From positions 248,001 through 312,000 of IMG/VR virus record IMGVR_UViG_3300028654_000001: DNA of 64,000 nt. One strand, 5' to 3'. Of this stretch, positions 7,577 through 46,426 are shown piece by piece. The position numbers and the translations under genes are program-made. Numbering within the stretch: the stretch's first letter is position 1; each line of letters starts with the position of its first letter. The notes beneath the pieces were generated by a model. The model did no database searches and was not told the DNA's origin. It saw only the letters and a program-made list of their open reading frames with translations.

Positions 7577-8143
7577 TTACAGATCAGATATACTGATCCC
7601 AGTCATTTTTTGAAGCTTCTCAACGACATCAGTCTTTATCTGGCTGATTCTTGGTTCGGATACGTTCAGTTGAGCGGCCAATTCCTTTTGGGTCATACCT
7701 TCGAAGTAGTACTTCAGAATAATCGTCTCTTCGCGCTTGGTAAGCTTCGCCATTTTTGCTATAACTTTTAGGAGAAGCTGTCTAGAAGATACTTGATCCT
7801 CACCCAAGGTTAGATCAACCACGTCATTGTCTAGAACATCCCTAAACTCAGGTTGATTATCGGGTCCTGCCCTGCGCACATACCCGCTCTCTTTGCGGAT
7901 CTCATCAATGATCTGCCCGCGGATCCTCACTCGAGCATAGTAGACGAACTCATCTTCAGAACCCTCGTATCGGTTACAGGCATCCCATAGACCGATCTTA
8001 CCCCAGTGGATCAGTTCCTCAATTTGAAATGGAAATCCAGAACCTCTTAGACTCCATGCAACTTGCTTAGCTAAATAGCTATACTTGTTGAACCTCTTGT
8101 TGAAACCCCTACTGATAGGAGCCTTTTCCTTGTGATTGAACAA
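7577..8143 (-). CDS. sigma-70 family RNA polymerase sigma factor, FliA/WhiG (sigma28)-like
   Basis: Region 2 EELIHWGKIGLWDACNRY...FVYYARVRIRGQIIDEIRK; region 4 HTH LTKREETIILKYYFEGMTQKELAAQLNVSEPRISQI. Confidence 0.85.
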   Translation of the reverse strand: MFNHKEKAPISRGFNKRFNKYSYLAKQVAWSLRGSGFPFQIEELIHWGKIGLWDACNRYEGSEDEFVYYARVRIRGQIIDEIRKESGYVRRAGPDNQPEFRDVLDNDVVDLTLGEDQVSSRQLLLKVIAKMAKLTKREETIILKYYFEGMTQKELAAQLNVSEPRISQIKTDVVEKLQKMTGISISDL

Positions 8144-11652: not shown

Positions 11653-11815
11653 ACCCAGTAGTGGCAATAAGTAGATCAGTGCCAGACCCCCAAGAATGCC
11701 GATTCAATCAAATTTTGACGAGATTCTGACCTCTAGTGCGTAATAACTAAAGTGAATAGACAAACCTGATAACTAACTTATACCCACATAACAAGTAAAC
11801 TGGTGAGGATATCCA

Positions 11816-29070: not shown

Positions 29071-31446
29071 TCAGGCTTCAGCAGCGGCCGGAGAAATCTC
29101 CCCCCGAGGGGGTATGTCAGCAGGCTCCCGCTCTCGCAAGGTAATCATACAATCCCCACCATTGACGGCTTGTTTCGTTACAACAATCTTTTCAATGTCA
29201 GGGTTGTTTGGAGCTTCATAGGAGATCTTCCTGGTTGCTTTCTCTACAATCGAACGCAGAGCCCTGGCACCCGTTGGCTTCTTCTTAGCCAGAGTGGCGA
29301 TCTCGGTGAGAGCTTCTGGATCAAATTCAAGGTTGATCCCATCCATTCTGAAGAGGGCCTGAACCTGTTGCACTATACTATTCCGTGGTTTCACCAAAAT
29401 CTCGACTAACTGTTCTTCTGTTAGCTCGATAGTACTAGTAATTATAGGAAGGCGTCCCATCATCTCAGGTATGATCCCAAAGTCCAGAACATCTTGCTCT
29501 ATAACCTCAGTATAACCACGGGTTTTATCAACTTTTTCCTTTGCTACAGCCCCAAAACCCATGCTGGAACTCTTGTTCAACCTTCGAGCAACAATCTCAT
29601 CAATGCTAGCAAAGGCACCCGCGCAGATGAAGAGAATGTTCGTAGTATCCACCAAGTCAAAGGTCTGCATCCCGGCGCCAGCCTTACCCATTCCACGAGG
29701 GACTGCCACTGTCGACCCCTCGAGGAGCTTGAGGAGGGCTTGCTGAACACCCTCACCAGATACATCCCGGTACCCAGCTCGGTCACGACCGCTACCCCTG
29801 GCGATCTTGTCTACCTCGTCTAAAAACACGATTCCCCATTGAGCACGCTCCACATCTCCACCCGCATCTAATATGAGACCCTGGATGAGAGTCTCCACAT
29901 CAGCCCCAACATAACCGGCTTGTGTGAGGGTGGTTGCGTCTCCAACATGGAATGGAACGTTCAGCATCCGAGCTAACGTCTCAAAAATATGAGTTTTTCC
30001 AGTGTTATGGGTAACAGTGAAGTCGTCCAGTAGGTAGCGGTGGTCCCCATCTAAAACAAATCCAAAGTATTCCTCAGCCGGCATAGTTCGAGTCTTGAAT
30101 CCAATCCTGAGAACATTTTTACTAGACTGCCTCTCAGCTGCCTTCTTACGAGGTATTCTAGTAGGGACTTCAGAGGTACTTCCGGATATGCACATCCGAT
30201 AGTAAGCCCCTACAAATCCTGTTTGACAACTCTTTGTACAAGGTTGCGGGTAACAAGCAAAACCAAGACTCCTAGTAATGAAGGTTAGGTCCCCCACTAA
30301 GGTTTTCGACTTGTTTACGAAGTCAAAGCAACTGCATTCATCGAGAGAACCATCTGTATCGATTAACCCTGCTAGGATCTCTAACCGATCTTTCCTAGAT
30401 GCTGTTTTGTAACAATGAGGTATGAACTTGTTCTCTCCAGTAACCCTAAGTAAACCTAGGCCCTCTAATGCTTTTGCTATTGGATTCTGAGGCTTACCGC
30501 ATCCTGGCTTGTCTGGGTTGGGGGAGTAACTATCACTCTGGGTCAAGTAATAAGTTGGGCACCGTTCCCCATTAGAATCATTCGGGGATAGGGTTAATCC
30601 AAATTTAGCAGCTTGCCTCTCTAGCTCTGCAAGTATCTCTGGGTCATCTGTAGTCACACCTGGGGTGCCTCCTAATGAACCGTCACCTAGTAGGATACCT
30701 AAGAAGTAAGGGTCAATAGGGAGTTCAGTTGTAGTAGCGGTAAACTCAACTGGTACCCGGAATAACTTGTGAACCGACTTCCTAGTTCTAGACCAAGATA
30801 GCCAATCCATTAGGGCAACGTCAGAAACATCATTAGCAGGGCGGTACCCTGATCCACCATTGTATCCAGTACGAACAAGAGTAAGGATATGACCCTCATT
30901 AACTACCCAGGGCTCGCCCTTAGTTGGAACAATCTCAACCATCCCACTAGTACCCCGATGTAATTCAAGTACATTGCGAGGGGTACTATCTGGACCCATA
31001 AGCTGATCACCCACCTGAACATCCTCTACAGCTTTTAGGGTCCCATCGAACATCAGCACAAGCTGACCTTTTTGGTGGCACCCGCTCGGCCCTAGAAACA
31101 AAATATTGCTTTTCCTAATTTCCACGGGTTTTGACCCGTCAGTCGGTTGCTCAGTAGCCCACTTACGACGTTTGAAGTGGTTGTAGACCACCGTGGAGAT
31201 GTCAATCTTGGCTTGCTCTTGTCCAATCACAAATTCATCCAAGTGAGCTTTGATCTCAAAGGGCTTCTTAAGAGGTTCTTCTTTCTTAGCCTCAAAGCCA
31301 CCCTTTTCAGCACCAGCTTCAAGAGAGGCAGCAGCCTGTACAATACATCGATTGCAGATCGATGGCCCCTTCTCTGGATTTGCTACAACGAGGTTCTTAA
31401 CCTCGTTTCGGGGGCGTCCGCAAAAGTCACAGGTAGTTACTGCCAT
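29071..31446 (-). CDS. clpX: ATP-dependent Clp protease ATP-binding subunit ClpX, containing an intein
   Basis: Zn-binding CDFCG...CNRC; spliced Walker A GPSG|TGKT; AGYVG pore loop; FLDEVDKI; RDVSGEGVQQALLKLLEG; MGF loop; GARALR. Confidence 0.92.
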   Translation of the reverse strand: MAVTTCDFCGRPRNEVKNLVVANPEKGPSICNRCIVQAAASLEAGAEKGGFEAKKEEPLKKPFEIKAHLDEFVIGQEQAKIDISTVVYNHFKRRKWATEQPTDGSKPVEIRKSNILFLGPSGCHQKGQLVLMFDGTLKAVEDVQVGDQLMGPDSTPRNVLELHRGTSGMVEIVPTKGEPWVVNEGHILTLVRTGYNGGSGYRPANDVSDVALMDWLSWSRTRKSVHKLFRVPVEFTATTTELPIDPYFLGILLGDGSLGGTPGVTTDDPEILAELERQAAKFGLTLSPNDSNGERCPTYYLTQSDSYSPNPDKPGCGKPQNPIAKALEGLGLLRVTGENKFIPHCYKTASRKDRLEILAGLIDTDGSLDECSCFDFVNKSKTLVGDLTFITRSLGFACYPQPCTKSCQTGFVGAYYRMCISGSTSEVPTRIPRKKAAERQSSKNVLRIGFKTRTMPAEEYFGFVLDGDHRYLLDDFTVTHNTGKTHIFETLARMLNVPFHVGDATTLTQAGYVGADVETLIQGLILDAGGDVERAQWGIVFLDEVDKIARGSGRDRAGYRDVSGEGVQQALLKLLEGSTVAVPRGMGKAGAGMQTFDLVDTTNILFICAGAFASIDEIVARRLNKSSSMGFGAVAKEKVDKTRGYTEVIEQDVLDFGIIPEMMGRLPIITSTIELTEEQLVEILVKPRNSIVQQVQALFRMDGINLEFDPEALTEIATLAKKKPTGARALRSIVEKATRKISYEAPNNPDIEKIVVTKQAVNGGDCMITLREREPADIPPRGEISPAAAEA
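30004..31080 (-). mobile_element. intein with LAGLIDADG endonuclease (359 aa) in the ClpX Walker A
   Basis: Begins CHQKG, ends THN followed by T; LGILLGDG and LAGLIDTDG. Confidence 0.9.
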
Positions 31447-34423: not shown

Positions 34424-35148
34424 ATCAAACCATCACAATGAACCTTACCGGTTTTCTCAATGATGCAGATCCCACCATCACCAAAGTCGTTCGGCCCCTC
34501 GACTCCATATCGATTGGAGACTACGAGTGTAACCTTGTTCTCCTCTGCAAACTCAATCCAACTGTTCGAAGGAAACCCGCCCTTTCCCCAATTTGCGCTT
34601 AATACAACTACATCTGCATCACCAGGGGAGTAGAAATTAGACCAATCATCATTCTTCTTGTCTCGAACGTCTCGACAGATGAGGAGGCCGATCCTCTTAT
34701 CCTCGAATTGAGACTTGATCACCGGTGGGTTAGAGATTCCCTTGGAAGCCCACAGGTGGTCATTGGCAAAATGGTTGATTTTACGGTAGCTCTCGTAGTA
34801 ACCCCCAGGCTCCATGTATATCTGTGAGTTGTAGATCTTGGAGGTACCAGAATCTACCTCGATGAACCCAAAGACGATGATGACATTGAGCTCCCTGGAT
34901 AGCTTTCGAAACACAAATAAAGCCATGTTAGGGTCTATTGAATCAACCTCATCCAACCCACTTACAGACTCTGCAAGGGGTCGAGCTTCAGCATCCGACA
35001 TGAAGGAGTAGCCAGTTGAGCAAAGTTCTGGCAAAACTACTAACTTAGCCCCATGAGTAGCTGCCTCTACAACGAGATTGGCCATCCGCATTATATTTGC
35101 GGACTTTTTCTTGAAGGTTGGGCAAAACTGTACTGTACCTACGCGCAT
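34387..35148 (-). CDS. carbon-nitrogen hydrolase (nitrilase/amidase superfamily)
   Basis: Catalytic E-K-C triad: VVLPELCSTGY, YRKINH, GLLICRDV. Confidence 0.85.
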   Translation of the reverse strand: MRVGTVQFCPTFKKKSANIMRMANLVVEAATHGAKLVVLPELCSTGYSFMSDAEARPLAESVSGLDEVDSIDPNMALFVFRKLSRELNVIIVFGFIEVDSGTSKIYNSQIYMEPGGYYESYRKINHFANDHLWASKGISNPPVIKSQFEDKRIGLLICRDVRDKKNDDWSNFYSPGDADVVVLSANWGKGGFPSNSWIEFAEENKVTLVVSNRYGVEGPNDFGDGGICIIEKTGKVHCDGLIWGQDCIVYGEV

Positions 35149-35155
35149 AGGGTAC

Positions 35156-36871
35156 TCACTTGAGAAGTGTGTAACGAGCCGTCAACTTGCTCTTCAGGTA
35201 ACTCCAAACAGAGTTCCTAACTTCACGATTCACCGCAGCAAGTCTTTTTTGAATAATTCTTGTCTGATCTGGAGTCAGGGACTTTAGGACCCCCGATTGC
35301 CAACGATCGAAGATATCCATACAGAAGGAGGTGTCCGCTGGAGTATTGGTAGTGAAAGCCTGGAACACCTTTTGTATATCGATGTCTAGATCATAACCCA
35401 TCTTTTGAGCGATGGTGATCCCACGGGTCTCCCTCACGAGCTCGGCAACCTCATCTACTTCCTTTGCCACAATCTCAAGAGCCCTACTATCCTTCTCTTG
35501 AAGGAGGTCTTCAAAAGCATTGATGGCCTTGGCTCCCATAACATCAGCATCGATGAGGGATTCGTCAGCCGCCCTGAAGAGAGATATCTGGACTCCGGCA
35601 ATATCTCTGACCGTACCCCTCCCTAACTTGTACAGATCCTCAATGGATTCTCGAACTTTAGCATAACCACCTTTGCCAACGAACTCAGCAAATTGCCCGA
35701 CGTTGTAGGCAGCCTTTTGGGCAGCCCCGTCCGAGTTTGACAGGTCAGGGTAAAACTCGATGCGTAATGCCTGGCTGACAACAGAGGCTTCCCTCTTGAG
35801 TTGTTCAATGAAGTCATCGCTCATCAGGGCCAAGCGAACAGTTTCGAACTGCTGATCAAATAAATCTCTCTGAGCCTTCAGACCAGCTTCCAAGATGGCA
35901 CTTAGGTGCTTGTACTGTCGGACTAGAGTCGACTCGAAGCGGTAGTCCTCGGTGAGTTGACTCTTACCCTTATCACACTTCCGTTGAACCGAATCAAGGA
36001 GTGAGTCCTTCTTCTCAGCCACTGCACCCCATGAGATAGAGATCACCTGGGAGGCTGTACCAAGATTGGCCAAGTCGGTAACCAGGTCGAAGTAGTCAGT
36101 AAGAATCTCGAACTTCTCGTCGAGCTTCCTTTTTGACATGATCGCTGAGGTGAGTGCTCCAAGCCCGTTTCCAGTGAACTTTTGCTTGGCCCGCACGGCC
36201 TTCATCTTCTTCTCAATCTTCTTGGCTAGGACATACGCGTCTGAGCCAACTTTGCTTGAAGAGTTCTTAATACCAAGGGTATTGCAGATGAAAACCACCT
36301 CAAACAGGGCTTCACTGTATTCGACGATGTCTAAGTCACCTGAGCCACCAGAGAGAGCCGCAATGATCCTACGAAGGTAGGTTTCGATAGCATCAACTTT
36401 GCTCAGGGTAGCTAAGTCAGTTTCATCCACTTGCCCCTTGTCCATCTTCTTGAGGATGGCCTTTTGGGCGTTGAGCTTCTTCATGATGGCTGCTGGAGCT
36501 TCGTAGCCACCTATCTCTAAATAGTGGTAGATACACTCGCAACCGACGATGAGCTTGTTCCCAGAGGTGCGGTTTCTGATTGGGAAGTGGTACTTGATGG
36601 GGGTCTTATCGCAGAGCTCACATGTCCCTGACGAGATGAATGGGAGACCGTTGCTCTCCCATTCACGAATAGCCTCATCAATGTTGTCAGATGATGAAGC
36701 TGCAAGAAGCCTCTCCCTGATCTTTGGCCAGTATTCACTACTGCGCCCCTTCCTACCGATAGCTTCCCCCTGCTCAAGATCTATGAGGGCGTCATCAATC
36801 TCAGAAATATCCCCGATGCCGGTCAGGTCATCGACGGGCTTCTTCTTGCTGGCGGCAAAGTTCAGAAACAT
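35156..36871 (-). CDS. hypothetical protein with a Zn-binding module
   Basis: TCELCDKTPIKYHFPIRNRTSGNKLIVGCECI followed by a long helical region. Confidence 0.65.
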   Translation of the reverse strand: MFLNFAASKKKPVDDLTGIGDISEIDDALIDLEQGEAIGRKGRSSEYWPKIRERLLAASSSDNIDEAIREWESNGLPFISSGTCELCDKTPIKYHFPIRNRTSGNKLIVGCECIYHYLEIGGYEAPAAIMKKLNAQKAILKKMDKGQVDETDLATLSKVDAIETYLRRIIAALSGGSGDLDIVEYSEALFEVVFICNTLGIKNSSSKVGSDAYVLAKKIEKKMKAVRAKQKFTGNGLGALTSAIMSKRKLDEKFEILTDYFDLVTDLANLGTASQVISISWGAVAEKKDSLLDSVQRKCDKGKSQLTEDYRFESTLVRQYKHLSAILEAGLKAQRDLFDQQFETVRLALMSDDFIEQLKREASVVSQALRIEFYPDLSNSDGAAQKAAYNVGQFAEFVGKGGYAKVRESIEDLYKLGRGTVRDIAGVQISLFRAADESLIDADVMGAKAINAFEDLLQEKDSRALEIVAKEVDEVAELVRETRGITIAQKMGYDLDIDIQKVFQAFTTNTPADTSFCMDIFDRWQSGVLKSLTPDQTRIIQKRLAAVNREVRNSVWSYLKSKLTARYTLLK

Positions 36872-36933
36872 CTTACCTACAAAAGTTTCATAGGTAGTTT
36901 TTGATTAACCTGTTATGACAAGCTCATGTTTCT

Positions 36934-37267
36934 CTGACAACCATTTTTGACCTGAATACCTACCGAGAGGGCTGCCCTAGCTGACAACCGCTGCTGGCCT
37001 GAGCACCAACCGTAAGTACGTGGCCAAGCTATAGAAAATGACGAACTGGAGCCGTAAGGCTCGATGCTGAAGACATCGAGCTCTTGCTGACAACCGCTGC
37101 TGGCCTGAGCACCAACCGTAAGAGCTTGCTGCGTTCTTCACCGGTCTCAGGCCGTCGACTGACAACCGCTGCTGGCCTGAGCACCAACCGTAAGGGCCTG
37201 AGCACCAACCGTAAGCACACTCGGCACCCATCTGACAACCGCTGCTGGCCTGAGCACCAACCGTAAG
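36934..37267 (-). CRISPR. degenerate CRISPR-like mini-array, 36-nt repeat CTTACGGTTGGTGCTCAGGCCAGCAGCGGTTGTCAG (minus strand)
   Basis: Identical repeats at 36981-37016, 37087-37122, 37159-37194 and 37232-37267; 21-nt partial repeat at 37195-37215; 7-nt remnant at 37052-37058; degenerate terminal repeat at 36934-36969 (26/36 identical); unique spacers of 16, 36, 28, 35 and 11 nt. Confidence 0.8.
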
Positions 37268-37338
37268 TCCAGTCGTCATAAACCAATAAACTCCTGTACT
37301 TGAGGCGTGCTTTGCGAGAGATTCCTTTCCTCCTCCTT

Positions 37339-38967
37339 TTAAAAGAACCTAAGTTGTTGATTTCCTTTAGGTTGTCTTTTAGAAGCGCCTGGGCGCTCGC
37401 GATGGGTACTCAGATCAGTAACGGGCTGGTAAGGCTCACACCCTTTTCCTGGCTCTCGTTCCCCACAAGCAGGTTCTACAACATCCAGGATCTCAGGCGC
37501 AACCGTTTCTTGGCCAGCTGATACAGGCGATCCAATCTGACTCCGGTTTCTAAGGCCGAAGCTGGTAGGTAACTCTCGTCCCTTGCCTATCTCGGATTCT
37601 TTTCCACTCAATGTCGCCTGTAAAAGCTTGTCCACTTCCGGCCAGGTTTTTAACGCCTGACCCACATTGAGCTGATCCCCTTCCACGCAAGTAGCGAGGA
37701 AAGCAGAGTATAAGTCTCGTTGAGACTTCAAACCACAGTCACACGAATGCCACCTCTGACTGAGAGACTTCTTCTCTATAGTCCCGCACCCATGGCAGGT
37801 TTGACTCAAACGAGTTGTTCTTGTTGAGAATTCAGTAACCTTTGAGGCTTTACGGCGAAGCTCAGCCATGAACATCCCAGGTGCCCGATACCCAACTGAT
37901 CTACCAAAGTTTTTCTGAAAAGATCTGTAAGATACTTTTTCTGTCCTAATATCGTCACCCAAAGTAAGGATTCGGTTAACCAAGTTACCTTGGAGGCTCT
38001 TTCGATGAGCTGCTTGCTTACGCTGAATAGATGATCTCTGTAAGGATACTTTGGTCTGTCTCTTGGAGATAACCCACTTCTTCGATCCCTTACGGATAGT
38101 TCCATCTGGGTTATAGTTGTTCGGATTATTGGATCGACGCTGACGATCCTCCTGTCTCTGAAGTTGGCGAATAGTCTCTTGTTTATCATCGAGTTCCGAA
38201 CAAAACTCCTCTAAAAGAGCTACTCCAGCTTGAGGAGCCACTACTGCAATAGTTGAAGGTCCTAAGTCTAACCCAACTACCCCGTGTCCAGGGAGGTTAC
38301 TTTCCTTTATGTATGGAAGACCCTCACAAACTAGTTGAGCATAGTACCGAAGTTTACTGCCAACTTGTCGACGGACTAGTTGAACATGTTTAATCCGGTG
38401 GGACAAACCATGGGCAGTAACCTTGTCGTTTGGGTCAATGACTGCTTTGATCCCCTTGAGCCCAAACCAATCAATATGATCCTTCTTCCATTTGACGCCG
38501 GAGTTGCTACGACCATCAATACAATTAAAAGTTCCTTTCCGTAAGAAATGTGGTCTACCACGTTTACTAAAGCTGTACCCCTGAACGATTTTGAACTCCC
38601 GAGAGGCAATAGCCATCATCGTGGAGGCGTCTAAATGACCGTCACTATTGAGCCAAGAATGAGTTAGATTAGCAGTAACCCAGTTATGAAGGTCAAACTC
38701 TCGAAAGTTAAATTCCTCATTCAACTGATTAAAGGTCTCGAACCTGGTCTTCGATTCTAATGAGCCCCTACCACCCTTTGGGAGTTTTATAGCAGTTCGG
38801 TATGCCTTGGATTCCTTCATCAAGTCCAACCGTTTGAGAGTCTCTGTCAAGCAAGCATTACCAACCATCCGAGCGACCTCAAATCGAATAGCAAGGATTC
38901 GCTCATCCCTAGGCGACGTAGCCAGAGGAAGCTCACAAACGAAGGTTGGACTTGAGTTACGAGCCAC
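37339..38967 (-). CDS. tnpB: TnpB/Cas12-like RNA-guided RuvC nuclease (542 aa)
   Basis: RuvC-I VGLDLGPS, RuvC-II IRTEKVSY, Zn finger CHGC...CDC and RuvC-III QRDLYSAFLA; all three catalytic residues present. Confidence 0.88.
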   Translation of the reverse strand: MARNSSPTFVCELPLATSPRDERILAIRFEVARMVGNACLTETLKRLDLMKESKAYRTAIKLPKGGRGSLESKTRFETFNQLNEEFNFREFDLHNWVTANLTHSWLNSDGHLDASTMMAIASREFKIVQGYSFSKRGRPHFLRKGTFNCIDGRSNSGVKWKKDHIDWFGLKGIKAVIDPNDKVTAHGLSHRIKHVQLVRRQVGSKLRYYAQLVCEGLPYIKESNLPGHGVVGLDLGPSTIAVVAPQAGVALLEEFCSELDDKQETIRQLQRQEDRQRRSNNPNNYNPDGTIRKGSKKWVISKRQTKVSLQRSSIQRKQAAHRKSLQGNLVNRILTLGDDIRTEKVSYRSFQKNFGRSVGYRAPGMFMAELRRKASKVTEFSTRTTRLSQTCHGCGTIEKKSLSQRWHSCDCGLKSQRDLYSAFLATCVEGDQLNVGQALKTWPEVDKLLQATLSGKESEIGKGRELPTSFGLRNRSQIGSPVSAGQETVAPEILDVVEPACGEREPGKGCEPYQPVTDLSTHRERPGASKRQPKGNQQLRFF

Positions 38968-38976
38968 GTATTTAGT

Positions 38977-38983
38977 TACACCA
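38977..38983 (-). promoter_or_regulatory. YGGTGTA motif upstream of the tnpB/cas12-like gene
   Basis: TACACCA on +, 9 nt from GTG 38967. Confidence 0.5.
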
Positions 38984-38995
38984 GAGATAAGTTAG

Positions 38996-39352
38996 TTACT
39001 CGAATTGTCGTTTCCAATACTGATCCCCCGGGCCTCGGTATTGAACACTAGTCCTGGGTGCTGATTGCATCAAGGAGATAGGAATCTTCGCCGTTTTACT
39101 CTTGACCCTGACCTCAAACCCATCGCTACAGGGTCGGATCACAGCACGCCCCCTCTTGAAAATCTCATCCATGAGCTTGTTCAAGTCAACACTGTCGGGC
39201 AGCTTGAACCTCTGATACTCAACCGATCCGATCGAAAGCTTGTCCAATACCATAAGGTGTTTGAACACATAACCAAGCTCGGAAGCCACCTCAACAACTA
39301 ATTGTGCAACAAGTTTTGGTGATTGGTGTTGGGTCTCAACAGCAAAATTCAT
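38996..39352 (-). CDS. hypothetical protein
   Basis: 118-aa ORF. Confidence 0.55.
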   Translation of the reverse strand: MNFAVETQHQSPKLVAQLVVEVASELGYVFKHLMVLDKLSIGSVEYQRFKLPDSVDLNKLMDEIFKRGRAVIRPCSDGFEVRVKSKTAKIPISLMQSAPRTSVQYRGPGDQYWKRQFE

Positions 39353-39391
39353 GAGGTCAGTCTCGCTCTGGAAGTGGTTATCGAAGGAATC

Positions 39392-39787
39392 TCAGTCATC
39401 ATCCTCTAGGATTCGTTCGAACCTCGTTCGAGGATTTACTTTCTCTGGCTTCACAATTTTGTGAGATGTTCGAATGTAGGTGGTACGTAACTCCCATCGG
39501 TCTTGTCCGTATTCAACCTGGGATAAAACATAGACAGGACCCTCGTGACCTCTGAGGTGATTGTGTGCCCTTTCACCCTCTAGAGTCAAAAACTTAAGAA
39601 ACCCACCCGATGGTAATCTAATGGTGAAAGCATCCATCCGTTGAATGTGTTCACTAGACAGTGAGGACCTAGCAGCAGCTATTAGGAATCTGGAATGGTT
39701 ATTATTGAATGCGAACACGATTACCCTTTGACCCCCAAGGGCAGCCGGTACGGCTTCCGCTAACATCTGTGCTTGATTCAACTCCAC
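39392..39787 (-). CDS. hypothetical protein
   Basis: 131 aa; ends PRTRFERILEDDD. Confidence 0.55.
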   Translation of the reverse strand: MELNQAQMLAEAVPAALGGQRVIVFAFNNNHSRFLIAAARSSLSSEHIQRMDAFTIRLPSGGFLKFLTLEGERAHNHLRGHEGPVYVLSQVEYGQDRWELRTTYIRTSHKIVKPEKVNPRTRFERILEDDD

Positions 39788-39794
39788 TGGGTCC

Positions 39795-40769
39795 TCAGGT
39801 TGTTCGCTCTTTTGGTACCGCTGCTTCAGCTTCTCTCACGAAGTCTTCGATTGGTCGGGCGCATGGCAACTCAAAGTCTGCCGGCTGGTAGTCATTAACG
39901 TCGAATGCAGTAAGGAACTCATCGATCTCCCGCTGAGCCATACCATGTTCCTTGCATAACATCTCTATAGATTGGGTTCCAGTTAGTGGAATCCCAAGTT
40001 TGAGCATGTTACACAGGACCAACATCTCTTGGCGGCTGAAGTTGTGCGACTTATAGTTGTAGTCGGACCACGCGGAGAATAGGTTTGGCCATCCCTGTTG
40101 AAGAATTCCAGCAATGCTGTTAGCAAAGGCCCTGATCTCCCACTGGGCGTGATTATCACACCGAAGAGTCAGAAAGTGCATCAGGTTGTGAGCATCAATC
40201 TTCCACCGCCATTGAGTATAGGTCGAGAGTGGGAGATCAATCCTGGACAACTCTCTAGCTACATCTTCGGCCAAGAGCCACTCATAGTTGTCCTTGGTAG
40301 TGACCCGTCCATCAACCCACCGTTGAACCGCCTTAGTGTAGGTGTTGGCATCCGTCTCAGAGTTCTCACGCCCCTGTTTATTGTTCGTAGATTGCTTGGC
40401 AAAGTTACCAAGTTCCGGAGTGTGGAAGAGCATCGGAAGAAGACTATATCGACCACTGACCTCATTTACCGCTGCTGTTCGATGCCTGATCCACTGACGA
40501 GCTACGAAGATCGGCATCGAACAATGGAAGTGCAGCTCGACAAACTCGAATGGACTTGTGTGCATCTTTCGACGAAGGTATCTAACCAAACCACGGTCAT
40601 TGTTACCAGCTTTTGTGCCATGCCCATAGCTTGTTCTGGCACAAGTCGGCACAGTATTGTCCGTCCCCATGTAGTCCACTAGTGCCACAAAGCCATGATC
40701 CAGAACTGGAAAGTATTCGCCCAGAAGGGCTTCCGCAGTCTCTGAGGTGGCACGCTTGGTCTCGGTCAT
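39795..40769 (-). CDS. thyX: FAD-dependent thymidylate synthase
   Basis: HTSPFEF, PIFVARQWIRHR, NEVSGRYS and HAQWEIR motifs. Confidence 0.93.
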   Translation of the reverse strand: MTETKRATSETAEALLGEYFPVLDHGFVALVDYMGTDNTVPTCARTSYGHGTKAGNNDRGLVRYLRRKMHTSPFEFVELHFHCSMPIFVARQWIRHRTAAVNEVSGRYSLLPMLFHTPELGNFAKQSTNNKQGRENSETDANTYTKAVQRWVDGRVTTKDNYEWLLAEDVARELSRIDLPLSTYTQWRWKIDAHNLMHFLTLRCDNHAQWEIRAFANSIAGILQQGWPNLFSAWSDYNYKSHNFSRQEMLVLCNMLKLGIPLTGTQSIEMLCKEHGMAQREIDEFLTAFDVNDYQPADFELPCARPIEDFVREAEAAVPKERTT

Positions 40770-41425
40770 ATGACGTCCTCTCGTTCAAAACGGGTGGGTA
40801 TCTTACTTCGATCGAACTCGGGCTCAGGAAGAGGAAATCGTGCTTCCTTCAGGAACCCAGATTCGAACACCCTGTTTACACCAGAGTCACCAAACCTATT
40901 CTTACTGATTGTAAACGATCTACCTCTATCATCCAAACGTATGGTGAGACTCGCATAATAACCAACCCCAGCTGGAAAGTCCTCTGGTAAGGTTCTCCGA
41001 TTCCATGTAATAACCATGGCTAAGTCTGGTCTTCTTCTACGAACTCTACTAATGACCCTAACCATCTCCTGAGCTCGAGCCGCCATACCCTCAGATACAG
41101 AGACCATGTTTTGAATACCCTCAACAAGGACTAGATCATAGCTTTGATCCAGTAGCAACTCACCTAATTCATAAAGCGATGTCACATCTTGATTGATATC
41201 GTAGTGGTGGTAACTAGGATCTGGTCCGTTCTCGATATCAACTACAAGAACTCGAGCACTAGTGTGTCTTGCAACATTATCAGCAATGGATCGAATAAGA
41301 GAGGTCTTACCAGACATCGGGGTCCCTATAACAGTAGTAAGAGATCCGCGGGGGATTCCAGGACAATCCTCCCCTATGAGAGAATCTATAGCTGGAAATC
41401 CAGTGCTGTAGTGTGGGACAGACAT
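40766..41425 (-). CDS. short RecA/RadA-superfamily ATPase
   Basis: GIPRGSLTTVIGTPMSGKTS, Walker-B-like LVLVE and ISKNRFG. Confidence 0.65.
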   Translation of the reverse strand: MSVPHYSTGFPAIDSLIGEDCPGIPRGSLTTVIGTPMSGKTSLIRSIADNVARHTSARVLVVDIENGPDPSYHHYDINQDVTSLYELGELLLDQSYDLVLVEGIQNMVSVSEGMAARAQEMVRVISRVRRRRPDLAMVITWNRRTLPEDFPAGVGYYASLTIRLDDRGRSFTISKNRFGDSGVNRVFESGFLKEARFPLPEPEFDRSKIPTRFEREDVI

Positions 41426-41991
41426 CAGCAGATCCCCTTACTCACCATGGATACAATCGCATCCCAGTGATAGACCCGAAACCCATCCCAAGACATGTGG
41501 TTGTTATTGGTTGTATTCCAAAGAATAGGAACCCCTCTAGGATTAAACTTATACCAGCTTCGAAGTTGATCTAAGTTATCCTCAACGAACCAATCTCCTG
41601 AAATGAGATATTTAGCCGACAAGAAGGCAACGTGGTCTTTGTCAAAACCGAAGTGCTTATCTAGCCATTCATACCGCTCTGATACCCATGGAACACTATC
41701 GTGGGGGTTGGTAACAGCGAACACCTCAACCAACCCCTGAAGTTTTCTGATAGCCTCTTGAGAACCCTCGATTGGCTTTAGTCCAAGGCAAAACCCAGGT
41801 TCTGCCATCTCTCTGAACACACCCATCCGTTGAACATCAGTCAGGATACTAAATAGATCCCATACTTTGAAGTCCTCAAGCTTCCAGTTCTGGTCAGTAA
41901 CCCGTCGAATAATCTCAACTACTGGTGCTTGTAGTGAAGCCAATACTTCGTCAACATCAACTAAAAGTCTACGAGGTGCTGCCACTGGCAT
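41425..41991 (-). CDS. 5'(3')-deoxyribonucleotidase (NT5C-like HAD)
   Basis: LLVDVDEVLA, LKPIEGSQEA, ERYEWLDKHF and GDWFVED motifs. Confidence 0.85.
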   Translation of the reverse strand: MPVAAPRRLLVDVDEVLASLQAPVVEIIRRVTDQNWKLEDFKVWDLFSILTDVQRMGVFREMAEPGFCLGLKPIEGSQEAIRKLQGLVEVFAVTNPHDSVPWVSERYEWLDKHFGFDKDHVAFLSAKYLISGDWFVEDNLDQLRSWYKFNPRGVPILWNTTNNNHMSWDGFRVYHWDAIVSMVSKGIC

Positions 41992-42000
41992 CTAGCCCTA

Positions 42001-43480: not shown

Positions 43481-46426
43481 CTACTTGGTGGCCTTCTCTG
43501 CTGCAGTAGCCGAGATTGTCTTGAATTGAGTTGAACGACCCTTAGAAGCAAATCTGGCTCGGATACCGTCCCCAGATTCCTTGTCGAACCCTACCCAATC
43601 AATGATATTATGGATCTCATCAGACATAGTCTTGATGATACGGGGCCGCCGCGTTAGGTCCTCCAGAAGGATCTCATAGTCCAGACCCTTGCACTTTGCA
43701 TTGAAGCTTTTGACCATCGAAGCTTCAACAGCCTGTTCGATCTCACGACCTACTAGACCATCAGCTTTCTCGGCCAAAGTAGCTAGGTTGAAGTTGGATA
43801 CATCTTGCGAGAAGTTCTTTGCATGGATCTTTATGATATCGATGAGGGTTTCCTCATCAGGGATATCGAAGAAGAACCTTTCTGGCATCCTGTTGACCAT
43901 CTCCGCGGGCATGGTCTTCAGGGAGTTGGCAGTCATCACCAAACAGGCTGGAGCATTAGATTCTTGGGTCCAGGTTGAGAGGATACCCAGCAAGCGAGAG
44001 GTGGTACCCGCATCTGATTGAGCCGATGAATCCCCACCGGATAGGCTCTTCTCAGCTTCATCTATCCACATAATGCAATTATGTGTGATCAATCCATTTG
44101 CAATAAATGAATGAGTGTCCTCACCCTCACAAACCAAGTCATAAACATCTTGAGTCCCAATGGGTTCAATGCTCTTCACCTGTACCCACCTACAATCAGC
44201 CTCAAGAATACGCTTGAGCTCAGATCCGCTAGACCCGAACTTCTCAATGTAGTTAATGAGATGACGTTCACTAACTGGAACTCTACCACTCTCATAAGAC
44301 CAGGTAACCCCAGACGAAGCACCTAAATCTGAGAACTTGGTACCAGACGCCTTTCTGGCCTCATGTAATAGTTGACCACAAGCAAACCCTGAACCTCGAT
44401 CAAAACCAATAGATGAAGAACTAATTTGTGTGGCCTTGACACTCTTTTCAACAAGGTACTCCCTAATAATTCCGGCTAAGTGAACAGCTCTACTACCGGT
44501 AATCTCCATTGAAGGGAAGTCAAACTTAGAAGGTATTACCCCCAGTGATTGGATTAGTTGACGACCCAATAACTGACGCTGAGCCCACATCTTCGGATGT
44601 TTGACAGTAAGAGCGATCTTATTACGGCCAATACATCCATCAGCATCAATCCACCCCGCAAGGAAAGCAGCTCGTACCTCCGGTGGTGCTGTCAAGATAT
44701 GCTTACGTGCTTCTCTGAGAAATTCAGCTGCTAACTGATTTGTAACTAAAGATGTCCAACAGGTTTTGAAAACTGAATCTTCAGTTAGTCCAGTTAGTAT
44801 AGGATCCTTAGAGTTATTCTCATGACGTGTTGCTTGAAGTCCAAATTGATTGATTAACCCGTGCTCAAAATAGGAGAGTAACCCCTCAGACGTGTTAACC
44901 AAACCAATTCCGTCATTAGCGCCGATGAAGCCATCACCCTCAAGTATACCTAGAACCCAACCTAGTTCTGTAGACCAAACCCTTGGGAGCTTTGGTACAA
45001 TGGCATCCCGAAAACCGCCACCCCCCCTACGAAACTCCATTCTTCCCTGGGCAGCTTCATAATTACGCATTCCAACTGGATGGAACCTAGTGCAATCTGA
45101 ATCCCCGGGATACTTGGCTATAGAAACCGCCATCATATCCCCAGGTAAAAGCTCGTCAGTGCTGACCCAATCTGGTAACCCACCTCGCATAATATAGTGG
45201 AGGTGGTTTTCTGTAGCGTTCAAGTAGTAACCATTAGCAGCATCAATACGGAAGGCTTCTGCTTGACGACATGTGATAGCACTCACCCGGGTTGAACCCA
45301 ATCGAAGTGTCTTTTCATTCCAACATTGAACGGAAAGATCAGTGGTTCCAGACAAGGACTCTTGCCATAAAACACCAATTGGTTTTGAAGTCCCATCTGC
45401 AAGAGTGACCTCGGTCTCTTCCGTCACGCATGGGGATACCGACTCCACGATCCTCAGAGCCCGATACAAGTTAGCTTCGGACTCACCCACTGCAGAGTTT
45501 CTAAGTTTTCCCATCTCGAACTGAATGAGAGGGAGCTTCCATTCTGTGGCAAGAGCCTTGGCTGAAAGTGACTTACCACAACCATAAACCCCCATGAGAA
45601 GGACCCCGCGGGGTGGTACCAAACCGAATGCCTGCCCCTCTTCAGTCCAACAAGATTGAGTACTACGTGCCCATTCTTTGAAGCACTCGGCCCCACCAAC
45701 CGAGTCAAAGCTAACTTTGCTCGAGTCGACGATCTGTACCAGATCGGTTTTCTTAATCTGGTTCCGCTTGTACTTACTAATCAAGACCGGGTCTACACGC
45801 TTTGGATCTACGGAGTCCTTCTTGGTTCTCACCACTGATTGAGTGATGGCAGCCTCTACCTCAAAGCTAGTAAACCCACGGAATAACTTGCCGATATTGG
45901 AGGGCACAGGTGTCTGAAGTTGCCTACAGAAATCTGTAACAAGAGTAGTCAACTCTTCTTCCTGGAGCCCCTTAGTGTCAACGATCTCAAAGTACCGAGC
46001 AAGCTTCTCTGGAATGACTCGCCGAGTGCTCACAAATATAAGGCACTTCACAACTCTGAGATCCACATGGAGTTGATGGATGATGTTCAGAACACGCCGG
46101 ACAGCTTGTTCATCTCGAAAGATCCTTTCAGGATCAGTGAAGATGTAGAAGTGCTCCTTGTCTTTCGGGTCATCCTTGTAGACCTGAGTAAGAGCCTCAT
46201 GGAGCTCGCGTGGAGTAGCCTCCGTATGACTCCTTTGAGTCCAATCTCTAGTCAGATCACCAATCTTCTTCAACCCGAGGCACCAATTGTAGACCCATGT
46301 TCGGTCTTCATGCTTATTCATCTGGAGTTGGAAGTCTTTGATGAAGTTATCCTCTTCATCGGTGACTACATAAACCAGACGGGTAAGTGCCCGTAGGTGA
46401 TGAACCATCTCAGCATTCAGGGTCAT
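43481..46426 (-). CDS. Ycf46-like AAA+ ATPase containing an intein
   Basis: PPRGVLLMGVYGCGKSLSAKA, VGESEAN, spliced SP|CIMWIDEAEK, TAN and RFFFDIPD motifs. Confidence 0.85.
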   Translation of the reverse strand: MTLNAEMVHHLRALTRLVYVVTDEEDNFIKDFQLQMNKHEDRTWVYNWCLGLKKIGDLTRDWTQRSHTEATPRELHEALTQVYKDDPKDKEHFYIFTDPERIFRDEQAVRRVLNIIHQLHVDLRVVKCLIFVSTRRVIPEKLARYFEIVDTKGLQEEELTTLVTDFCRQLQTPVPSNIGKLFRGFTSFEVEAAITQSVVRTKKDSVDPKRVDPVLISKYKRNQIKKTDLVQIVDSSKVSFDSVGGAECFKEWARSTQSCWTEEGQAFGLVPPRGVLLMGVYGCGKSLSAKALATEWKLPLIQFEMGKLRNSAVGESEANLYRALRIVESVSPCVTEETEVTLADGTSKPIGVLWQESLSGTTDLSVQCWNEKTLRLGSTRVSAITCRQAEAFRIDAANGYYLNATENHLHYIMRGGLPDWVSTDELLPGDMMAVSIAKYPGDSDCTRFHPVGMRNYEAAQGRMEFRRGGGGFRDAIVPKLPRVWSTELGWVLGILEGDGFIGANDGIGLVNTSEGLLSYFEHGLINQFGLQATRHENNSKDPILTGLTEDSVFKTCWTSLVTNQLAAEFLREARKHILTAPPEVRAAFLAGWIDADGCIGRNKIALTVKHPKMWAQRQLLGRQLIQSLGVIPSKFDFPSMEITGSRAVHLAGIIREYLVEKSVKATQISSSSIGFDRGSGFACGQLLHEARKASGTKFSDLGASSGVTWSYESGRVPVSERHLINYIEKFGSSGSELKRILEADCRWVQVKSIEPIGTQDVYDLVCEGEDTHSFIANGLITHNCIMWIDEAEKSLSGGDSSAQSDAGTTSRLLGILSTWTQESNAPACLVMTANSLKTMPAEMVNRMPERFFFDIPDEETLIDIIKIHAKNFSQDVSNFNLATLAEKADGLVGREIEQAVEASMVKSFNAKCKGLDYEILLEDLTRRPRIIKTMSDEIHNIIDWVGFDKESGDGIRARFASKGRSTQFKTISATAAEKATK
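44078..45430 (-). mobile_element. intein with LAGLIDADG endonuclease (451 aa) just before Walker B of the AAA+ ATPase
   Basis: Begins CVTEET, ends THN followed by C; LGILEGDG and FLAGWIDADG. Confidence 0.9.

What the first reader, a model, noticed from the sequence alone, without database searches (positions are those of the whole stretch)
38960..38998. The nuclease gene appears wired into the phage's own regulons (domestication rather than transposon insertion)
Seen: TGGTGTA lies 9 nt before the GTG start, the same spacing as core phage genes. Just upstream is TAACTAACTTAT (38987-38998, minus strand), an exact 12-nt match to 11770-11781 upstream of gene 11816; part of it overlaps the preceding stop codon. 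I saw no transposase or IS left-end hairpin. Inference: the nuclease is a resident phage gene with timed expression.
Basis: partly seen in the sequence, partly recalled or inferred. Interest (0 to 1): 0.6.

Follow-up and report, generated by a model that had tools for sequence, protein, structure and literature searches.

The report
Phage TnpB insertion with homing guide
The nuclease gene is not an old resident of this 512-kb phage: it is part of a ~2.1-kb cassette (an RNA-guided TnpB nuclease plus a small repeat-spacer array) inserted at a site that is empty in every related phage sampled. The cassette carries a guide-like sequence matching that empty site, so it probably spreads like a homing endonuclease.

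Summary
TGGTGTA does lie 9 nt before the GTG of a 542-aa TnpB. (Y)GGTGTA-N9/10-start is a genuine signal across this phage lineage and is not position-enriched in the bacterial loci examined. The 12-mer match is exact but is what chance gives: 89% of genes have such a recurring upstream 12-mer.

The gene is not a conserved resident. In 13 of 14 related phage loci the 118-aa upstream gene abuts the 571-aa downstream gene (36 nt apart in the close relatives), with no tnpB; the fourteenth has an unrelated insert at the same point. The ~2.1-kb insert (window ~36901-38995) holds the GGTGTA leader, tnpB with an intact D-E-D triad, a conserved omegaRNA scaffold lacking its terminal hairpin, and an array of a 36-nt repeat unique to this locus.

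One spacer equals 36/36 nt of the phage's own genome, with identity ending exactly at the repeat edges. The 17 nt after the last, degenerate repeat match the relatives' empty-site allele exactly. The phage's own allele matches only 8 of those 17.

Best reading: a phage-adapted, TranC-like TnpB homing cassette. The insertion is near certain; the homing mechanism is inferred.

The parts
38996..39352 (-). Upstream neighbour p118 (118 aa, no family). It is conserved in related huge phages, and its stop codon marks the left edge of the insertion.
   Evidence: Homologues at 66-94% identity on contigs up to 510 kb. In relatives it is followed directly by the p571 gene.
36901..38995 (-). The inserted cassette as a whole (~2.09 kb). 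It is absent from all 14 related loci. The right edge is uncertain by 2-3 nt because of a run of A.
   Evidence: Junction comparison of the window with L054, L055, L057, L058, L059 and L060. tblastn found no TnpB-1 homologue in L054-L067.
38968..38995 (-). 28-nt leader inside the insert, containing T-GGTGTA (38983..38977) 9 nt before the GTG.
   Evidence: The leader has no counterpart in the empty sites (leader versus spacer alignment is not above shuffles).
37339..38967 (-). tnpB-1: a 542-aa RNA-guided-nuclease-family protein with a GTG start and an intact RuvC-like D234/E343/D418 triad.
   Evidence: NF040570 4.5e-19, phrog_506 7.5e-33, PF07282 6e-5. 3422 homologues at E <= 0.001 among the candidates scored, 47-57% identical among the listed ones apart from P0002 (83%); invariant D/E/D columns. 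The family profile hits ISDra2 TnpB structures 8h1j/8bf8.
37408..37581 (-). omegaRNA-like scaffold within the 3' part of tnpB-1. It matches the family covariance model, except that the terminal hairpin is not present.
   Evidence: Model R1 was built from 13 bacterial homologues (13 of 26 pairs covary). It scores 56.3 bits, E 5e-15, with model positions ~147-175 skipped.
37396..37428 (-). Candidate anti-repeat (tracr-like 3' tail of the scaffold), predicted to pair with nt 1-32 of the array repeat.
   Evidence: 28 bp including 5 G-U, -34.8 kcal/mol, against -27.4 +/- 3.8 for 400 random genome segments (p 0.037). The degenerate repeat R7 keeps the duplex despite 10 substitutions (1.8% of random substitution sets do as well).
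36934..37267 (-). Repeat-spacer array of a 36-nt repeat. Exact copies: 37267-37232, 37194-37159, 37122-37087 and 37016-36981. Exact 21-nt stub: 37215-37195. 7-nt stub: 37058-37052. Degenerate last copy R7: 36969-36934. Unique spacers of 16, 36, 28, 35 and 11 nt.
   Evidence: The repeat occurs nowhere else in the genome. ORF 36977..37279 reads the repeats in three frames and has no homologue or family.
37123..37158 (-). Spacer S3, which is 36/36 identical to the phage's own genome at G000 500679..500714. Identity stops exactly at both repeat edges. The protospacer's 5' flank ends in TTT.
   Evidence: Both loci were also seen in contigs of independent runs (loose ends at 37123/37158).
36917..36933 (-). 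Guide-like 17-mer immediately after the last repeat. It is the exact reverse complement of the relatives' empty-site allele (end of the p118-p571 spacer plus the first 8 nt of p571).
   Evidence: 17/17 in L057, L058 and L060-62, and 14/14 in L059. 23/25 when extended. The own allele matches only the first 8 nt. The target's 5' flank ends in TTC.
36872..36900 (-). The phage's own (diverged) copy of the p118-p571 intergenic spacer, directly upstream of the p571 start codon.
   Evidence: Alignment with the empty sites of L060 and others.
35156..36871 (-). Downstream neighbour p571 (571 aa), conserved across the phage group. Its first codons are part of the guide's target in relatives.
   Evidence: 89-94% identical in close relatives and 38-46% in IMG/VR relatives.
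11770..11781 (+). Second exact copy of TAACTAACTTAT, in a divergent intergenic region 34 nt before the ATG at 11816.
   Evidence: Judged a chance match.

Best explanation
The nuclease is a TnpB that arrived in this phage as part of a ~2.1-kb mobile cassette. It was inserted immediately after the stop codon of a conserved 118-aa gene, at a site that is empty in all sampled relatives.

The cassette descends from IS200/IS605 elements of the kind found in Anaerolineales and other bacteria, but it is no longer an IS. It has no transposase and no left end, and the right-end/omegaRNA terminal hairpin has been lost. Instead it has three new features:
(i) a phage-type start signal (YGGTGTA, 9 nt before the GTG);
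(ii) a tracr-like scaffold ending in a stretch complementary to a 36-nt repeat;
(iii) a small array of that repeat with unique spacers.
This is the 'split omegaRNA' arrangement of transposon-CRISPR intermediates (TranC).

The unit after the last, degenerate repeat carries 17 nt that match the TnpB-less relatives' allele of the very site the cassette occupies. The phage's own allele is mismatched beyond 8 nt.

Proposed mechanism (inferred): in a cell co-infected with a relative, TnpB loaded with this guide cuts the relative's empty site next to a TTC flank. Repair from the cassette-bearing genome then copies the cassette in, or the rival is simply damaged. This would be RNA-guided 'intronless homing' or marker exclusion. 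The other spacers would aim at further targets.

Shown: the insertion, the scaffold, the array, the two exact matches, and the genome-wide motif. Inferred: RNA processing, repeat/anti-repeat pairing, the TAM, cleavage, and homing itself.
For: Insertion:
- 9 close and 5 distant related loci keep ThyX-p131-p118-[36-90 nt]-p571-CN_hydrolase with no tnpB.
- Five distant relatives' records, one of them complete at 407 kb, have no PF07282 match.
- The 83%-identical relative P0002 sits among different phage-like genes.
- Only the filled form is seen in four rhizosphere runs.

Origin:
- The closest bacterial homologues (48-55%) are Anaerolineales copies. In several of them (L001, L002, L005, L010) a Y1 tnpA ends right before tnpB.
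- The family has a covariation-supported omegaRNA.
- The phage keeps 56 bits of this model but lacks the terminal hairpin.
- The genome has no Y1 or serine recombinase.
- The catalytic D/E/D residues are intact.

Array:
- Four exact 36-nt repeats, stubs and a degenerate last repeat, unique to this locus.
- Spacer S3 is 36/36 identical to the phage's own genome with exact edges.
- An anti-repeat candidate sits exactly where the hairpin is missing (p 0.037), and R7's substitutions spare the duplex (p 0.018).

Homing guide:
- A 17/17 match to the relatives' empty-site allele against 8/17 to self, with a TTC flank.

Phage adaptation:
- The GGTGTA-N9/10 signal is found in this phage and its relatives but not in the bacterial loci.

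Precedents:
- TranC systems with 32-38-bp repeats and 3-20 units, some in phages (bioRxiv 10.64898/2026.03.27.714800).
- CAST homing by an atypical crRNA with a degenerate repeat (PMC11656645).
- Free-standing homing endonucleases of phages and non-restorative transposon homing (PMC13565253).
Against: - There are no expression or cleavage data, because no RNA run holds the locus.
- The array is irregular: spacers of 11-36 nt and truncated repeats.
- There is no adaptation module (no Cas1).
- The repeat alone is unstructured, and the anti-repeat statistics are only modest (p ~0.02-0.04).
- The 17-mer could be a by-product of an inverted duplication made during insertion rather than a working guide. 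The intergenic spacer is itself partly palindromic.
- Spacer S3 matches the phage's own genome perfectly next to a T-rich flank. That would be self-destructive if every unit were active.
- The TAM is inferred from only two flanks.
- The closest relative of the protein (P0002) could not be inspected at the DNA level.
- The leader with GGTGTA could have evolved after insertion.
Confidence: 0.6

Rival explanations
1. One reading: tnpB is a domesticated, resident phage gene. It would be vertically inherited at this locus and expressed on the phage's own timed programme for the phage's benefit.
For: - YGGTGTA lies at the canonical 9-nt spacing.
- The gene is on the same strand as, and tightly packed with, replication and nucleotide-metabolism genes.
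- There is no transposase in the genome.
- The IS right-end hairpin is lost.
Against: - The gene is absent from the same site in all 14 related loci, down to 38% identity of the neighbouring protein.
- There is no TnpB in five distant relatives.
- The 83% relative lies in another gene context.
- The motif lies inside the inserted DNA.
- The 12-mer link is at chance level.
- A guide-like match to the relatives' empty site points to selfish spread.
Confidence: 0.07
2. An ordinary IS200/IS605 (or solo-tnpB, IS1341-like) insertion mobilised by a host TnpA in trans and now decaying. The downstream repeats and matches would be debris of no function.
For: - The nearest bacterial homologues are canonical tnpA-tnpB elements with a conserved omegaRNA.
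- The gene is single-copy and lineage-specific.
- The array is irregular, with truncated repeats.
Against: - There is no left end, and no right-end hairpin, which TnpA needs.
- The insert begins with a phage-specific start signal that was not position-enriched in the bacterial loci.
- The ORF and catalytic triad are intact.
- The four repeats are 100% identical, which argues against decay.
- Two exact matches (36/36 and 17/17) begin exactly at repeat edges.
Confidence: 0.13
3. The array is a viral mini-CRISPR array that borrows a host (or other) Cas system to fight related phages, and it lies next to tnpB only by co-insertion or chance. TnpB would use a separate, unrecognised guide, or none.
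For: - Virus-borne mini-arrays aimed at related viruses are known (PMC11656645).
- Repeat and spacer sizes (36/36 nt) are typical of CRISPR.
- The phage itself carries a type I-C-like system.
Against: - The repeat differs from the phage's own I-C repeat.
- It was not found in IMG/VR.
- In JGI metagenomes it was found only in this phage.
- It was not found in the 401 genomes sampled from the class of the closest bacterial homologue, allowing up to 3 mismatches.
- The scaffold's missing hairpin and the anti-repeat candidate tie the array to tnpB-1.
- The host is unknown, so this rival is not excluded.
Confidence: 0.12
4. The repeats are protein-binding iterons (for example a replication origin or regulatory site in the replication module), or they belong to a small repetitive protein gene, and are unrelated to RNA guidance.
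For: - The location is within the replication gene cluster.
- An ORF of 100 aa spans the repeats.
- The spacing is irregular.
Against: - The whole array lies within the insert and is absent from relatives that share the replication module.
- The ORF reads the repeats in three frames and has no homologue.
- The exact-edged 36-nt copy of a distant gene is not explained by this reading.
Confidence: 0.05

Closest known systems
IS200/IS605-family TnpB with omegaRNA (e.g. ISDra2; OMEGA systems)
   Same: - The protein family and catalytic D-E-D residues match.
- The RNA scaffold is encoded in the 3' end of the gene and matches the family covariance model.
- The logic of a guide that recognises the element-free allele is the same (Meers et al. 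2023, cited in PMC11656645; PMC13565253).
   Different: - There is no TnpA, no left end, and no right-end/terminal hairpin.
- The guide is not the adjacent flank. It is an inverted copy of a site ~30 nt away, in the relatives' allele.
- A multi-unit repeat array follows the gene.
- The carrier is a virulent-type giant phage and the start signal is phage-specific.
TranC (transposon-CRISPR intermediates) and miniature type V effectors (Cas12f/Cas12n)
   Same: - The effector is TnpB-sized.
- It sits next to a short array of ~36-nt repeats with no adaptation genes.
- The tracr-like part derives from the omegaRNA.
- Some members of this group are phage-borne (bioRxiv 10.64898/2026.03.27.714800; PMC13565253).
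   Different: - The protein is still 48-57% identical to bona fide IS605 TnpBs, and its scaffold still scores 56 bits against their omegaRNA. This would make it a very young split.
- The array is irregular.
- One guide aims at the cassette's own empty site and one at the carrier genome.
- Membership of a defined TranC clade was not tested.
Atypical / delocalised crRNA of CRISPR-associated transposons (CAST I-F, V-K)
   Same: Both have a guide that follows a degenerate copy of the repeat, at or beyond the array's end, and that specifies the element's homing site (PMC11656645).
   Different: CASTs insert by Tn7-type transposition with nuclease-deficient effectors. Here the effector keeps its nuclease residues, and spread would rely on a break followed by recombination.
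Free-standing homing endonuclease genes of phages (T4 Seg/Mob; intronless homing, marker exclusion)
   Same: - The gene is inserted between two conserved genes.
- It is absent from relatives.
- The target lies in the neighbouring conserved gene's start region.
- The carrier's own allele is diverged at the target (PMC13565253).
- The same phage group shows other mobile inserts at this and neighbouring sites (L056 insert; GIY-YIG gene in L055).
   Different: Recognition would be by RNA guide rather than by protein.
Domesticated TnpB repressors (TldR)
   Same: It is a TnpB outside an IS, with a retargeted guide, and some examples lie in prophages (bioRxiv 10.1101/2023.11.30.569447, listed).
   Different: TldRs have an inactivated or truncated RuvC. 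Here D234/E343/D418 are intact and the gene is not conserved among relatives.

Membership tests
TnpB (IS200/IS605-family RNA-guided nuclease) | Sequence membership: RuvC-like fold with a zinc-ribbon TNB domain | tested here: met
   NF040570 4.5e-19 (below NCBI's curated cut-off), phrog_506 7.5e-33, PF07282 6e-5. 3422 homologues at E <= 0.001 among the candidates scored. The family profile hits ISDra2 TnpB 8h1j/8bf8 at 1e-7.
TnpB (IS200/IS605-family RNA-guided nuclease) | Catalytic D-E-D triad present | tested here: met
   D234, E343 and D418 are invariant columns in A1 and align with the GvDLG / E / RD motifs of ISDra2.
TnpB (IS200/IS605-family RNA-guided nuclease) | omegaRNA scaffold overlapping the 3' end of the gene | tested here: met
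   Covariance model R1 scores 56.3 bits, E 5e-15, at 37581..37408. Only the terminal hairpin is missing.
IS200/IS605 insertion sequence (mobile by TnpA) | Y1 (or serine) transposase in the element or genome | tested here: not met
   PF01797 and PF00239 give no match in the 512-kb genome, while the controls ring.
IS200/IS605 insertion sequence (mobile by TnpA) | Subterminal hairpins at the left and right ends. In this family the right-end hairpin is the omegaRNA terminal stem around the stop codon. | tested here: not met
   The terminal hairpin is conserved and covarying in 13 bacterial copies. It is skipped in the phage hit and is not found elsewhere in 36800-37700. No inverted repeats were found in 36500-37500.
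TranC / type V CRISPR-like system | Effector adjacent to an array of direct repeats with unique spacers | tested here: met
   Four exact 36-nt repeats plus stubs and a degenerate terminal repeat, 71 nt after the stop codon, unique to this locus.
TranC / type V CRISPR-like system | Spacers correspond to protospacers, with identity ending at the repeat edges | tested here: met
   S3 is 36/36 identical to G000 500679..500714 with non-matching flanks. The terminal 17-mer matches the relatives' allele 17/17. The other spacers have no match.
TranC / type V CRISPR-like system | tracrRNA anti-repeat complementary to the repeat | tested here: inconclusive
   The candidate at 37428..37396 forms 28 bp (p 0.037 against random segments). 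R7's substitutions preserve the duplex (p 0.018). A first, wider scan was not above shuffles.
TranC / type V CRISPR-like system | Guide-dependent, PAM/TAM-dependent DNA cleavage; processed crRNA | not testable with these tools
   No RNA runs hold the locus. Both known flanks end in TTY, but two flanks cannot define a motif.
Free-standing homing endonuclease cassette (intronless homing) | Present/absent polymorphism between conserved flanking genes in related genomes | tested here: met
   Empty site in L054, L055 and L057-L067.
Free-standing homing endonuclease cassette (intronless homing) | The nuclease's target lies at or near the empty site, and the carrier's own allele is resistant | tested here: inconclusive
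   At the sequence level this holds: 17/17 to relatives and 8/17 to self. Cleavage and resistance were not tested.
Domesticated TnpB (TldR-like or core phage gene) | Conserved synteny/orthology across related genomes; often an inactivated nuclease | tested here: not met
   No orthologue at the site or elsewhere in the relatives examined. The nuclease residues are intact.

The most novel reading that the evidence does not exclude
A giant phage carries a TnpB caught in the act of turning from a transposon nuclease into a CRISPR-like effector. Its omegaRNA has split into a tracr-like scaffold and a repeat-guide array. It uses one guide, behind a degenerate repeat, as an RNA-programmed homing or marker-exclusion weapon against sibling phages that lack the cassette. 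This would make phage-phage competition, not cellular defence, a setting in which arrays arise from transposon guides.
Probability: 0.4. Interest if true: 0.85.

Novelty: new variant of a known kind. Interest (0 to 1): 0.68.

Why it matters
Three points matter if the reading holds.
1. It would be a natural example of RNA-guided 'intronless homing' between viruses. It joins three literatures that are usually separate: TnpB homing in transposons, free-standing homing endonucleases of phages, and the TnpB-to-Cas12 transition.
2. The effector is still about half identical to working IS605 TnpBs and keeps their RNA scaffold. The locus therefore offers a very short evolutionary step on which to test the 'RNA splitting' model experimentally.
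3. It shows that a lineage-specific expression signal next to a gene is not evidence of residency. Mobile cassettes that circulate among related phages carry the same signal.

Practically, it yields a compact nuclease with a predicted natural guide-target pair and a likely short T-rich flank.

Tried and rejected
- Raw enrichment of TGGTGTA in the window is not significant; only the positional analysis is.
- The 12-mer as a motif family fails. Sub-words are barely enriched, and copies with up to 2 mismatches fall mostly in coding DNA. It was rejected as a regulon signal.
- Near-identity search of 35000-42000 against GenBank phages found no match.
- Protein-seeded scans of IMG/VR with TnpB-1 and with p571 as single sequences found nothing. 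Only an alignment query found distant relatives.
- The repeat was not found in IMG/VR. In JGI metagenomes it occurs only in this phage and in an identical 1.8-kb fragment. It was not found in four Chloroflexota MAGs (three Anaerolineales, one Chloroflexia) or in 401 genomes of their class.
- Rfam gave nothing above noise in 36400-39400.
- The repeat alone has no fold better than shuffles.
- The first anti-repeat scan over the whole gene was not above shuffles.
- The repeat shows no similarity to the region downstream of TnpB-2. An 11-nt identity I had noticed there is taken as chance.
- The translated array ORF has no homologue.
- Spacers S1, S4, S5 and S6 have no match in the phage's own genome, the relatives' loci, GenBank phages or IMG/VR.
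- The leader (38968-38998) is no more similar to the empty-site spacer than shuffles are. My impression that it is a third spacer copy was dropped.
- My first forward-strand alignment of the post-array segment to the spacer was superseded by the exact reverse-complement match.
- Population data from 4 runs showed no empty-site joint and no variants of the array.
- Other regions of the close relatives' contigs (the ENA/Logan records behind L055-L057) could not be reached.
- The consensus promoter/terminator scan of the locus gave nothing above expectation.
Full report
CONTEXT. The window is bases 248001-312000 of a single 512,571-bp virus record. The record is 49% G+C, has a 127-bp direct terminal repeat, and is rated complete. 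It came from rhizosphere metagenomes. The part of the window around the finding is a minus-strand replication and nucleotide-metabolism module. It holds family-A DNA polymerase, an SNF2 helicase, an AAA ATPase and ClpX (all four with inteins), plus NT5C, a RecA-like protein, ThyX and a CN-hydrolase.

THE OBSERVATION.
- TGGTGTA lies at 38983..38977 (-), followed by 9 nt and then the GTG at 38967 of a 542-aa ORF (37339..38967).
- TAACTAACTTAT lies at 38998..38987 (-), overlapping the TAA of the upstream 118-aa ORF.
- A second exact copy lies at 11770..11781 (+).
- The GTG is the true start. The first 33 residues are conserved in homologues, although a gene caller had started the protein 33 codons later.

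The ORF is a TnpB: NF040570 4.5e-19, phrog_506 7.5e-33, PF07282 6e-5. Its RuvC-type D234/E343/D418 residues are invariant in the family and align with the catalytic motifs of ISDra2 TnpB.

THE GGTGTA SIGNAL IS REAL.
- As a plain count in the window the 7-mer is unremarkable (9 found, 6.3 expected).
- Genome-wide, GTGTA and GGTGT are the most enriched 5-mers in the 20 nt before long ORFs.
- Of 297 GGTGTA copies, 24, 33, 8 and 12 have the start codon of an ORF of at least 80 aa exactly 9, 10, 11 and 12 nt downstream. The background is 1-5 per spacing. GGAGG shows no positional peak.
- The consensus is YYGGTGTA with nothing conserved further upstream. It is sharply defined: 64 genes have an exact copy against 34 for all one-mismatch variants together.
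- The same positional peak is seen in close and distant related phages, but not in 217 kb of bacterial DNA around TnpB homologues.
- Genes with the motif seldom abut the preceding gene (gap under 15 nt in 9% against 38%) and more often face a divergent neighbour (43% against 26%).
- The phage has three sigma-70-family genes and no match to the RNA polymerase beta-subunit family PF00562.

I therefore take the motif to be either a compact promoter element giving near-leaderless mRNAs or a non-Shine-Dalgarno initiation signal. Which of the two is not settled.

THE 12-MER IS NOT A REGULON SIGNAL.
- It occurs exactly twice in the genome.
- However, 493 of 551 genes have some upstream 12-mer that recurs elsewhere in this 512-kb genome. 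That is what 1.02 million positions against 16.7 million possible words predicts.
- Relaxed copies fall mostly in coding DNA.
- The distance from the 12-mer to the GGTG motif is 4 nt at tnpB and 20 nt at gene 11816.

THE GENE IS AN INSERTION.
- The 118-aa upstream protein has homologues of 66-94% identity on contigs of up to 510, 473 and 169 kb.
- In L054, L055, L057, L058, L059 (the closest, 94%) and L060-L062, the gene order is AAA - NT5C - RecA-like - ThyX - p131 - p118 - 36 nt - p571 - CN-hydrolase. This matches the window except that tnpB and what follows it are missing.
- Five more distant IMG/VR relatives (p571 38-46% identical) also have p118 directly before p571.
- tblastn finds no TnpB-1 homologue in any of the 14 loci.
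- The five distant records, one of them a complete 407-kb genome, have no TNB-domain match at all.
- Junction comparison places the insert immediately after the p118 stop codon (TAG in relatives, TAA here). On the other side it ends just before the phage's own, diverged copy of the 36-nt spacer, which precedes the p571 ATG. The insert is therefore roughly window 36901-38995.
- The 28-nt leader with GGTGTA, and nine of the twelve bases of the '12-mer', are inside the insert.
- In L056 a different ORF of about 190 aa (no family) is inserted at the same point. It is also preceded by GGGTGTA.
- In L055 a GIY-YIG gene sits after p571. Mobile genes are evidently common in this neighbourhood.
- Contigs from four other rhizosphere runs show only the filled, nearly identical form.
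- The closest protein relative (P0002, 83%) lies on a 5.5-kb contig among other phage-like genes (UDG, Tad2-like), which is a different context.

WHERE IT CAME FROM, AND WHAT IT HAS LOST.
- Thousands of homologues of about 510-535 aa exist. Among those listed, all but P0002 are 47-57% identical.
- The closest in genomes are Anaerolineales MAGs, then Bacillota and cyanobacteria.
- In several of these, a Y1 transposase gene ends right at the tnpB start.
- The 3' end of tnpB plus about 11 nt encodes a conserved RNA. Its terminal hairpin straddles the stop codon and shows compensatory changes (13 of 26 pairs covary).
- A covariance model of this omegaRNA hits the phage gene at 37581..37408 with 56.3 bits, but the terminal hairpin is skipped. 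Nothing else in 36800-37700 matches it.
- The phage has neither a Y1 nor a serine transposase.

The cassette is thus an IS605 derivative that can no longer move as an IS.

THE ARRAY.
- Seventy-one nucleotides after the stop codon begins an array of a 36-nt direct repeat.
- It has four exact copies, an exact 21-nt stub, a 7-nt stub, and a last copy differing at 10 of its 36 positions (72% identical).
- The spacers are unique, at 16, 36, 28, 35 and 11 nt.
- The repeat occurs nowhere else in the genome.
- It was not found in IMG/VR.
- In JGI metagenomes it occurs only in this phage.
- It was not found in 401 genomes of the Anaerolineales MAG's class.
- The 100-aa ORF over the array reads the repeats in three frames and has no relatives.
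- The 36-nt spacer S3 (37158..37123) is identical over all 36 nt to G000 500679..500714, and the identity stops exactly at both repeat edges. The protospacer lies in a small gene about 380 nt downstream of a second, very divergent TnpB (TnpB-2) and is preceded by TTT.
- Immediately after the scaffold's end, where the hairpin should be, a 33-nt stretch (37428..37396) can pair with nt 1-32 of the repeat. The predicted duplex is 28 bp at -34.8 kcal/mol, against -27.4 +/- 3.8 for random genome segments (p 0.037).
- The degenerate last repeat differs at 10 positions yet keeps this duplex (-34.5 kcal/mol). Only 1.8% of random sets of 10 substitutions do as well.

This is the topology expected if the omegaRNA's terminal stem has been split into a tracr-like 5' arm and a repeat-borne 3' arm, as described for TranC systems (PMC13565253). 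The phage has no Cas1, which is also true of the described TranC loci.

THE HOMING GUIDE.
- The 17 nt that follow the last repeat (36933..36917) are the exact reverse complement of the relatives' sequence spanning the end of the p118-p571 spacer, the ATG, and the next five bases of p571.
- The match is 17/17 in L057, L058 and L060-L062, and 14/14 in L059. It is 23/25 if extended.
- L054 and L056 carry polymorphisms in the target.
- The phage's own allele matches only the first 8 nt.
- The target is preceded by TTC on the guide-sense strand.

A guide-position sequence that recognises the cassette-free allele of the cassette's own site, and not the carrier's allele, is the hallmark of homing. 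It resembles both the TnpB/omegaRNA logic in transposons and the atypical crRNA behind a degenerate repeat that CASTs use to home. It also matches the 'intronless homing' of free-standing phage endonucleases, whose targets lie in the adjacent conserved gene and whose carriers have resistant alleles.

VERDICT. The inference of residency does not survive comparison with relatives. The best-supported account is a phage-adapted, transposase-less TnpB cassette of the TranC kind that spreads, or excludes rivals, by RNA-guided cutting of sibling phages.
- The insertion is near certain.
- The RNA splitting is supported by four independent but individually modest lines: the missing hairpin, the anti-repeat's position, the R7 substitutions, and the exact-edged spacer.
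- The homing function rests on one striking sequence match and on analogy.

Four things are unexplained: the perfect self-match of S3, the irregular array, how units are added, and the exact role of GGTGTA (note).

Noticed in passing
whole genome; in the window e.g. 4554, 11208, 19685, 21898(+), 25073, 42006, 55550, 59279: YYGGTGTA 9-10 nt before start codons is a sharply defined signal in about 12% of genes of this phage and in its relatives. No Shine-Dalgarno-like peak is seen. The motif often forms back-to-back palindromes between divergent genes and sits right after tRNA genes. It may be a compact promoter giving near-leaderless mRNAs or a new kind of initiation signal.
   Followed up: partly
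G000 113.7-126.5 kb (locus L046), outside the window: The phage encodes a type I-C-like CRISPR-Cas module (Cas5d, Csd1/Cas8c, Cas7, a Cas3-like helicase). It is flanked by arrays of about 36 and about 33 units of a GTTTCAATGAACGGGG... repeat, in several repeat variants. No Cas1 is found in the genome.
   Followed up: partly
G000 501094..502503 (-) (L047 4094..5503), outside the window: There is a second, very divergent TnpB (469 aa; PF07282 4.9e-12; no GGTGTA before its GTG). The self-matching protospacer of array spacer S3 lies about 380 nt downstream of it, inside a small gene of unknown function.
   Followed up: partly
window 29071-31446, 43481-46426, 47843-52093, 55557-58655: Four replication/chaperone genes (ClpX-like, AAA ATPase, family-A DNA polymerase, SNF2 helicase) each carry an intein with Hint and/or LAGLIDADG domains. 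In relatives the AAA ATPase gene is only 529 aa, which suggests it lacks the intein there.
   Followed up: no
L056 6358..6931; L055 8058..8942: Other mobile-looking genes occupy the same neighbourhood in relatives. In the 473-kb phage an ORF of about 190 aa with no family is inserted at exactly the same point after the p118 stop, also behind GGGTGTA. In another relative a GIY-YIG endonuclease gene follows p571.
   Followed up: partly
window 7577..8143 (-) and G000 77304.., 485246..: Three sigma-70-family genes are present and no match to the RNA polymerase beta-subunit family (PF00562) was found. The phage probably redirects host polymerase with its own sigma factors.
   Followed up: no
G000 1-230 and 512057-512571: Both genome ends carry arrays of a 42-nt tandem repeat around the 127-bp direct terminal repeat. 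These may be packaging or end-related repeats.
   Followed up: no
window 37059..37086 (-): Spacer S4 of the mini-array contains a perfect 8-bp hairpin with a 7-nt loop. It gives a faint, non-significant hit to the terminal-hairpin part of the omegaRNA model.
   Followed up: no
window 37596..37624 (-): A sigma-70-like promoter match (TTTACA-17-AAGAAT) lies just upstream of the start of the omegaRNA-like scaffold inside tnpB. It is not above the number expected by chance.
   Followed up: no
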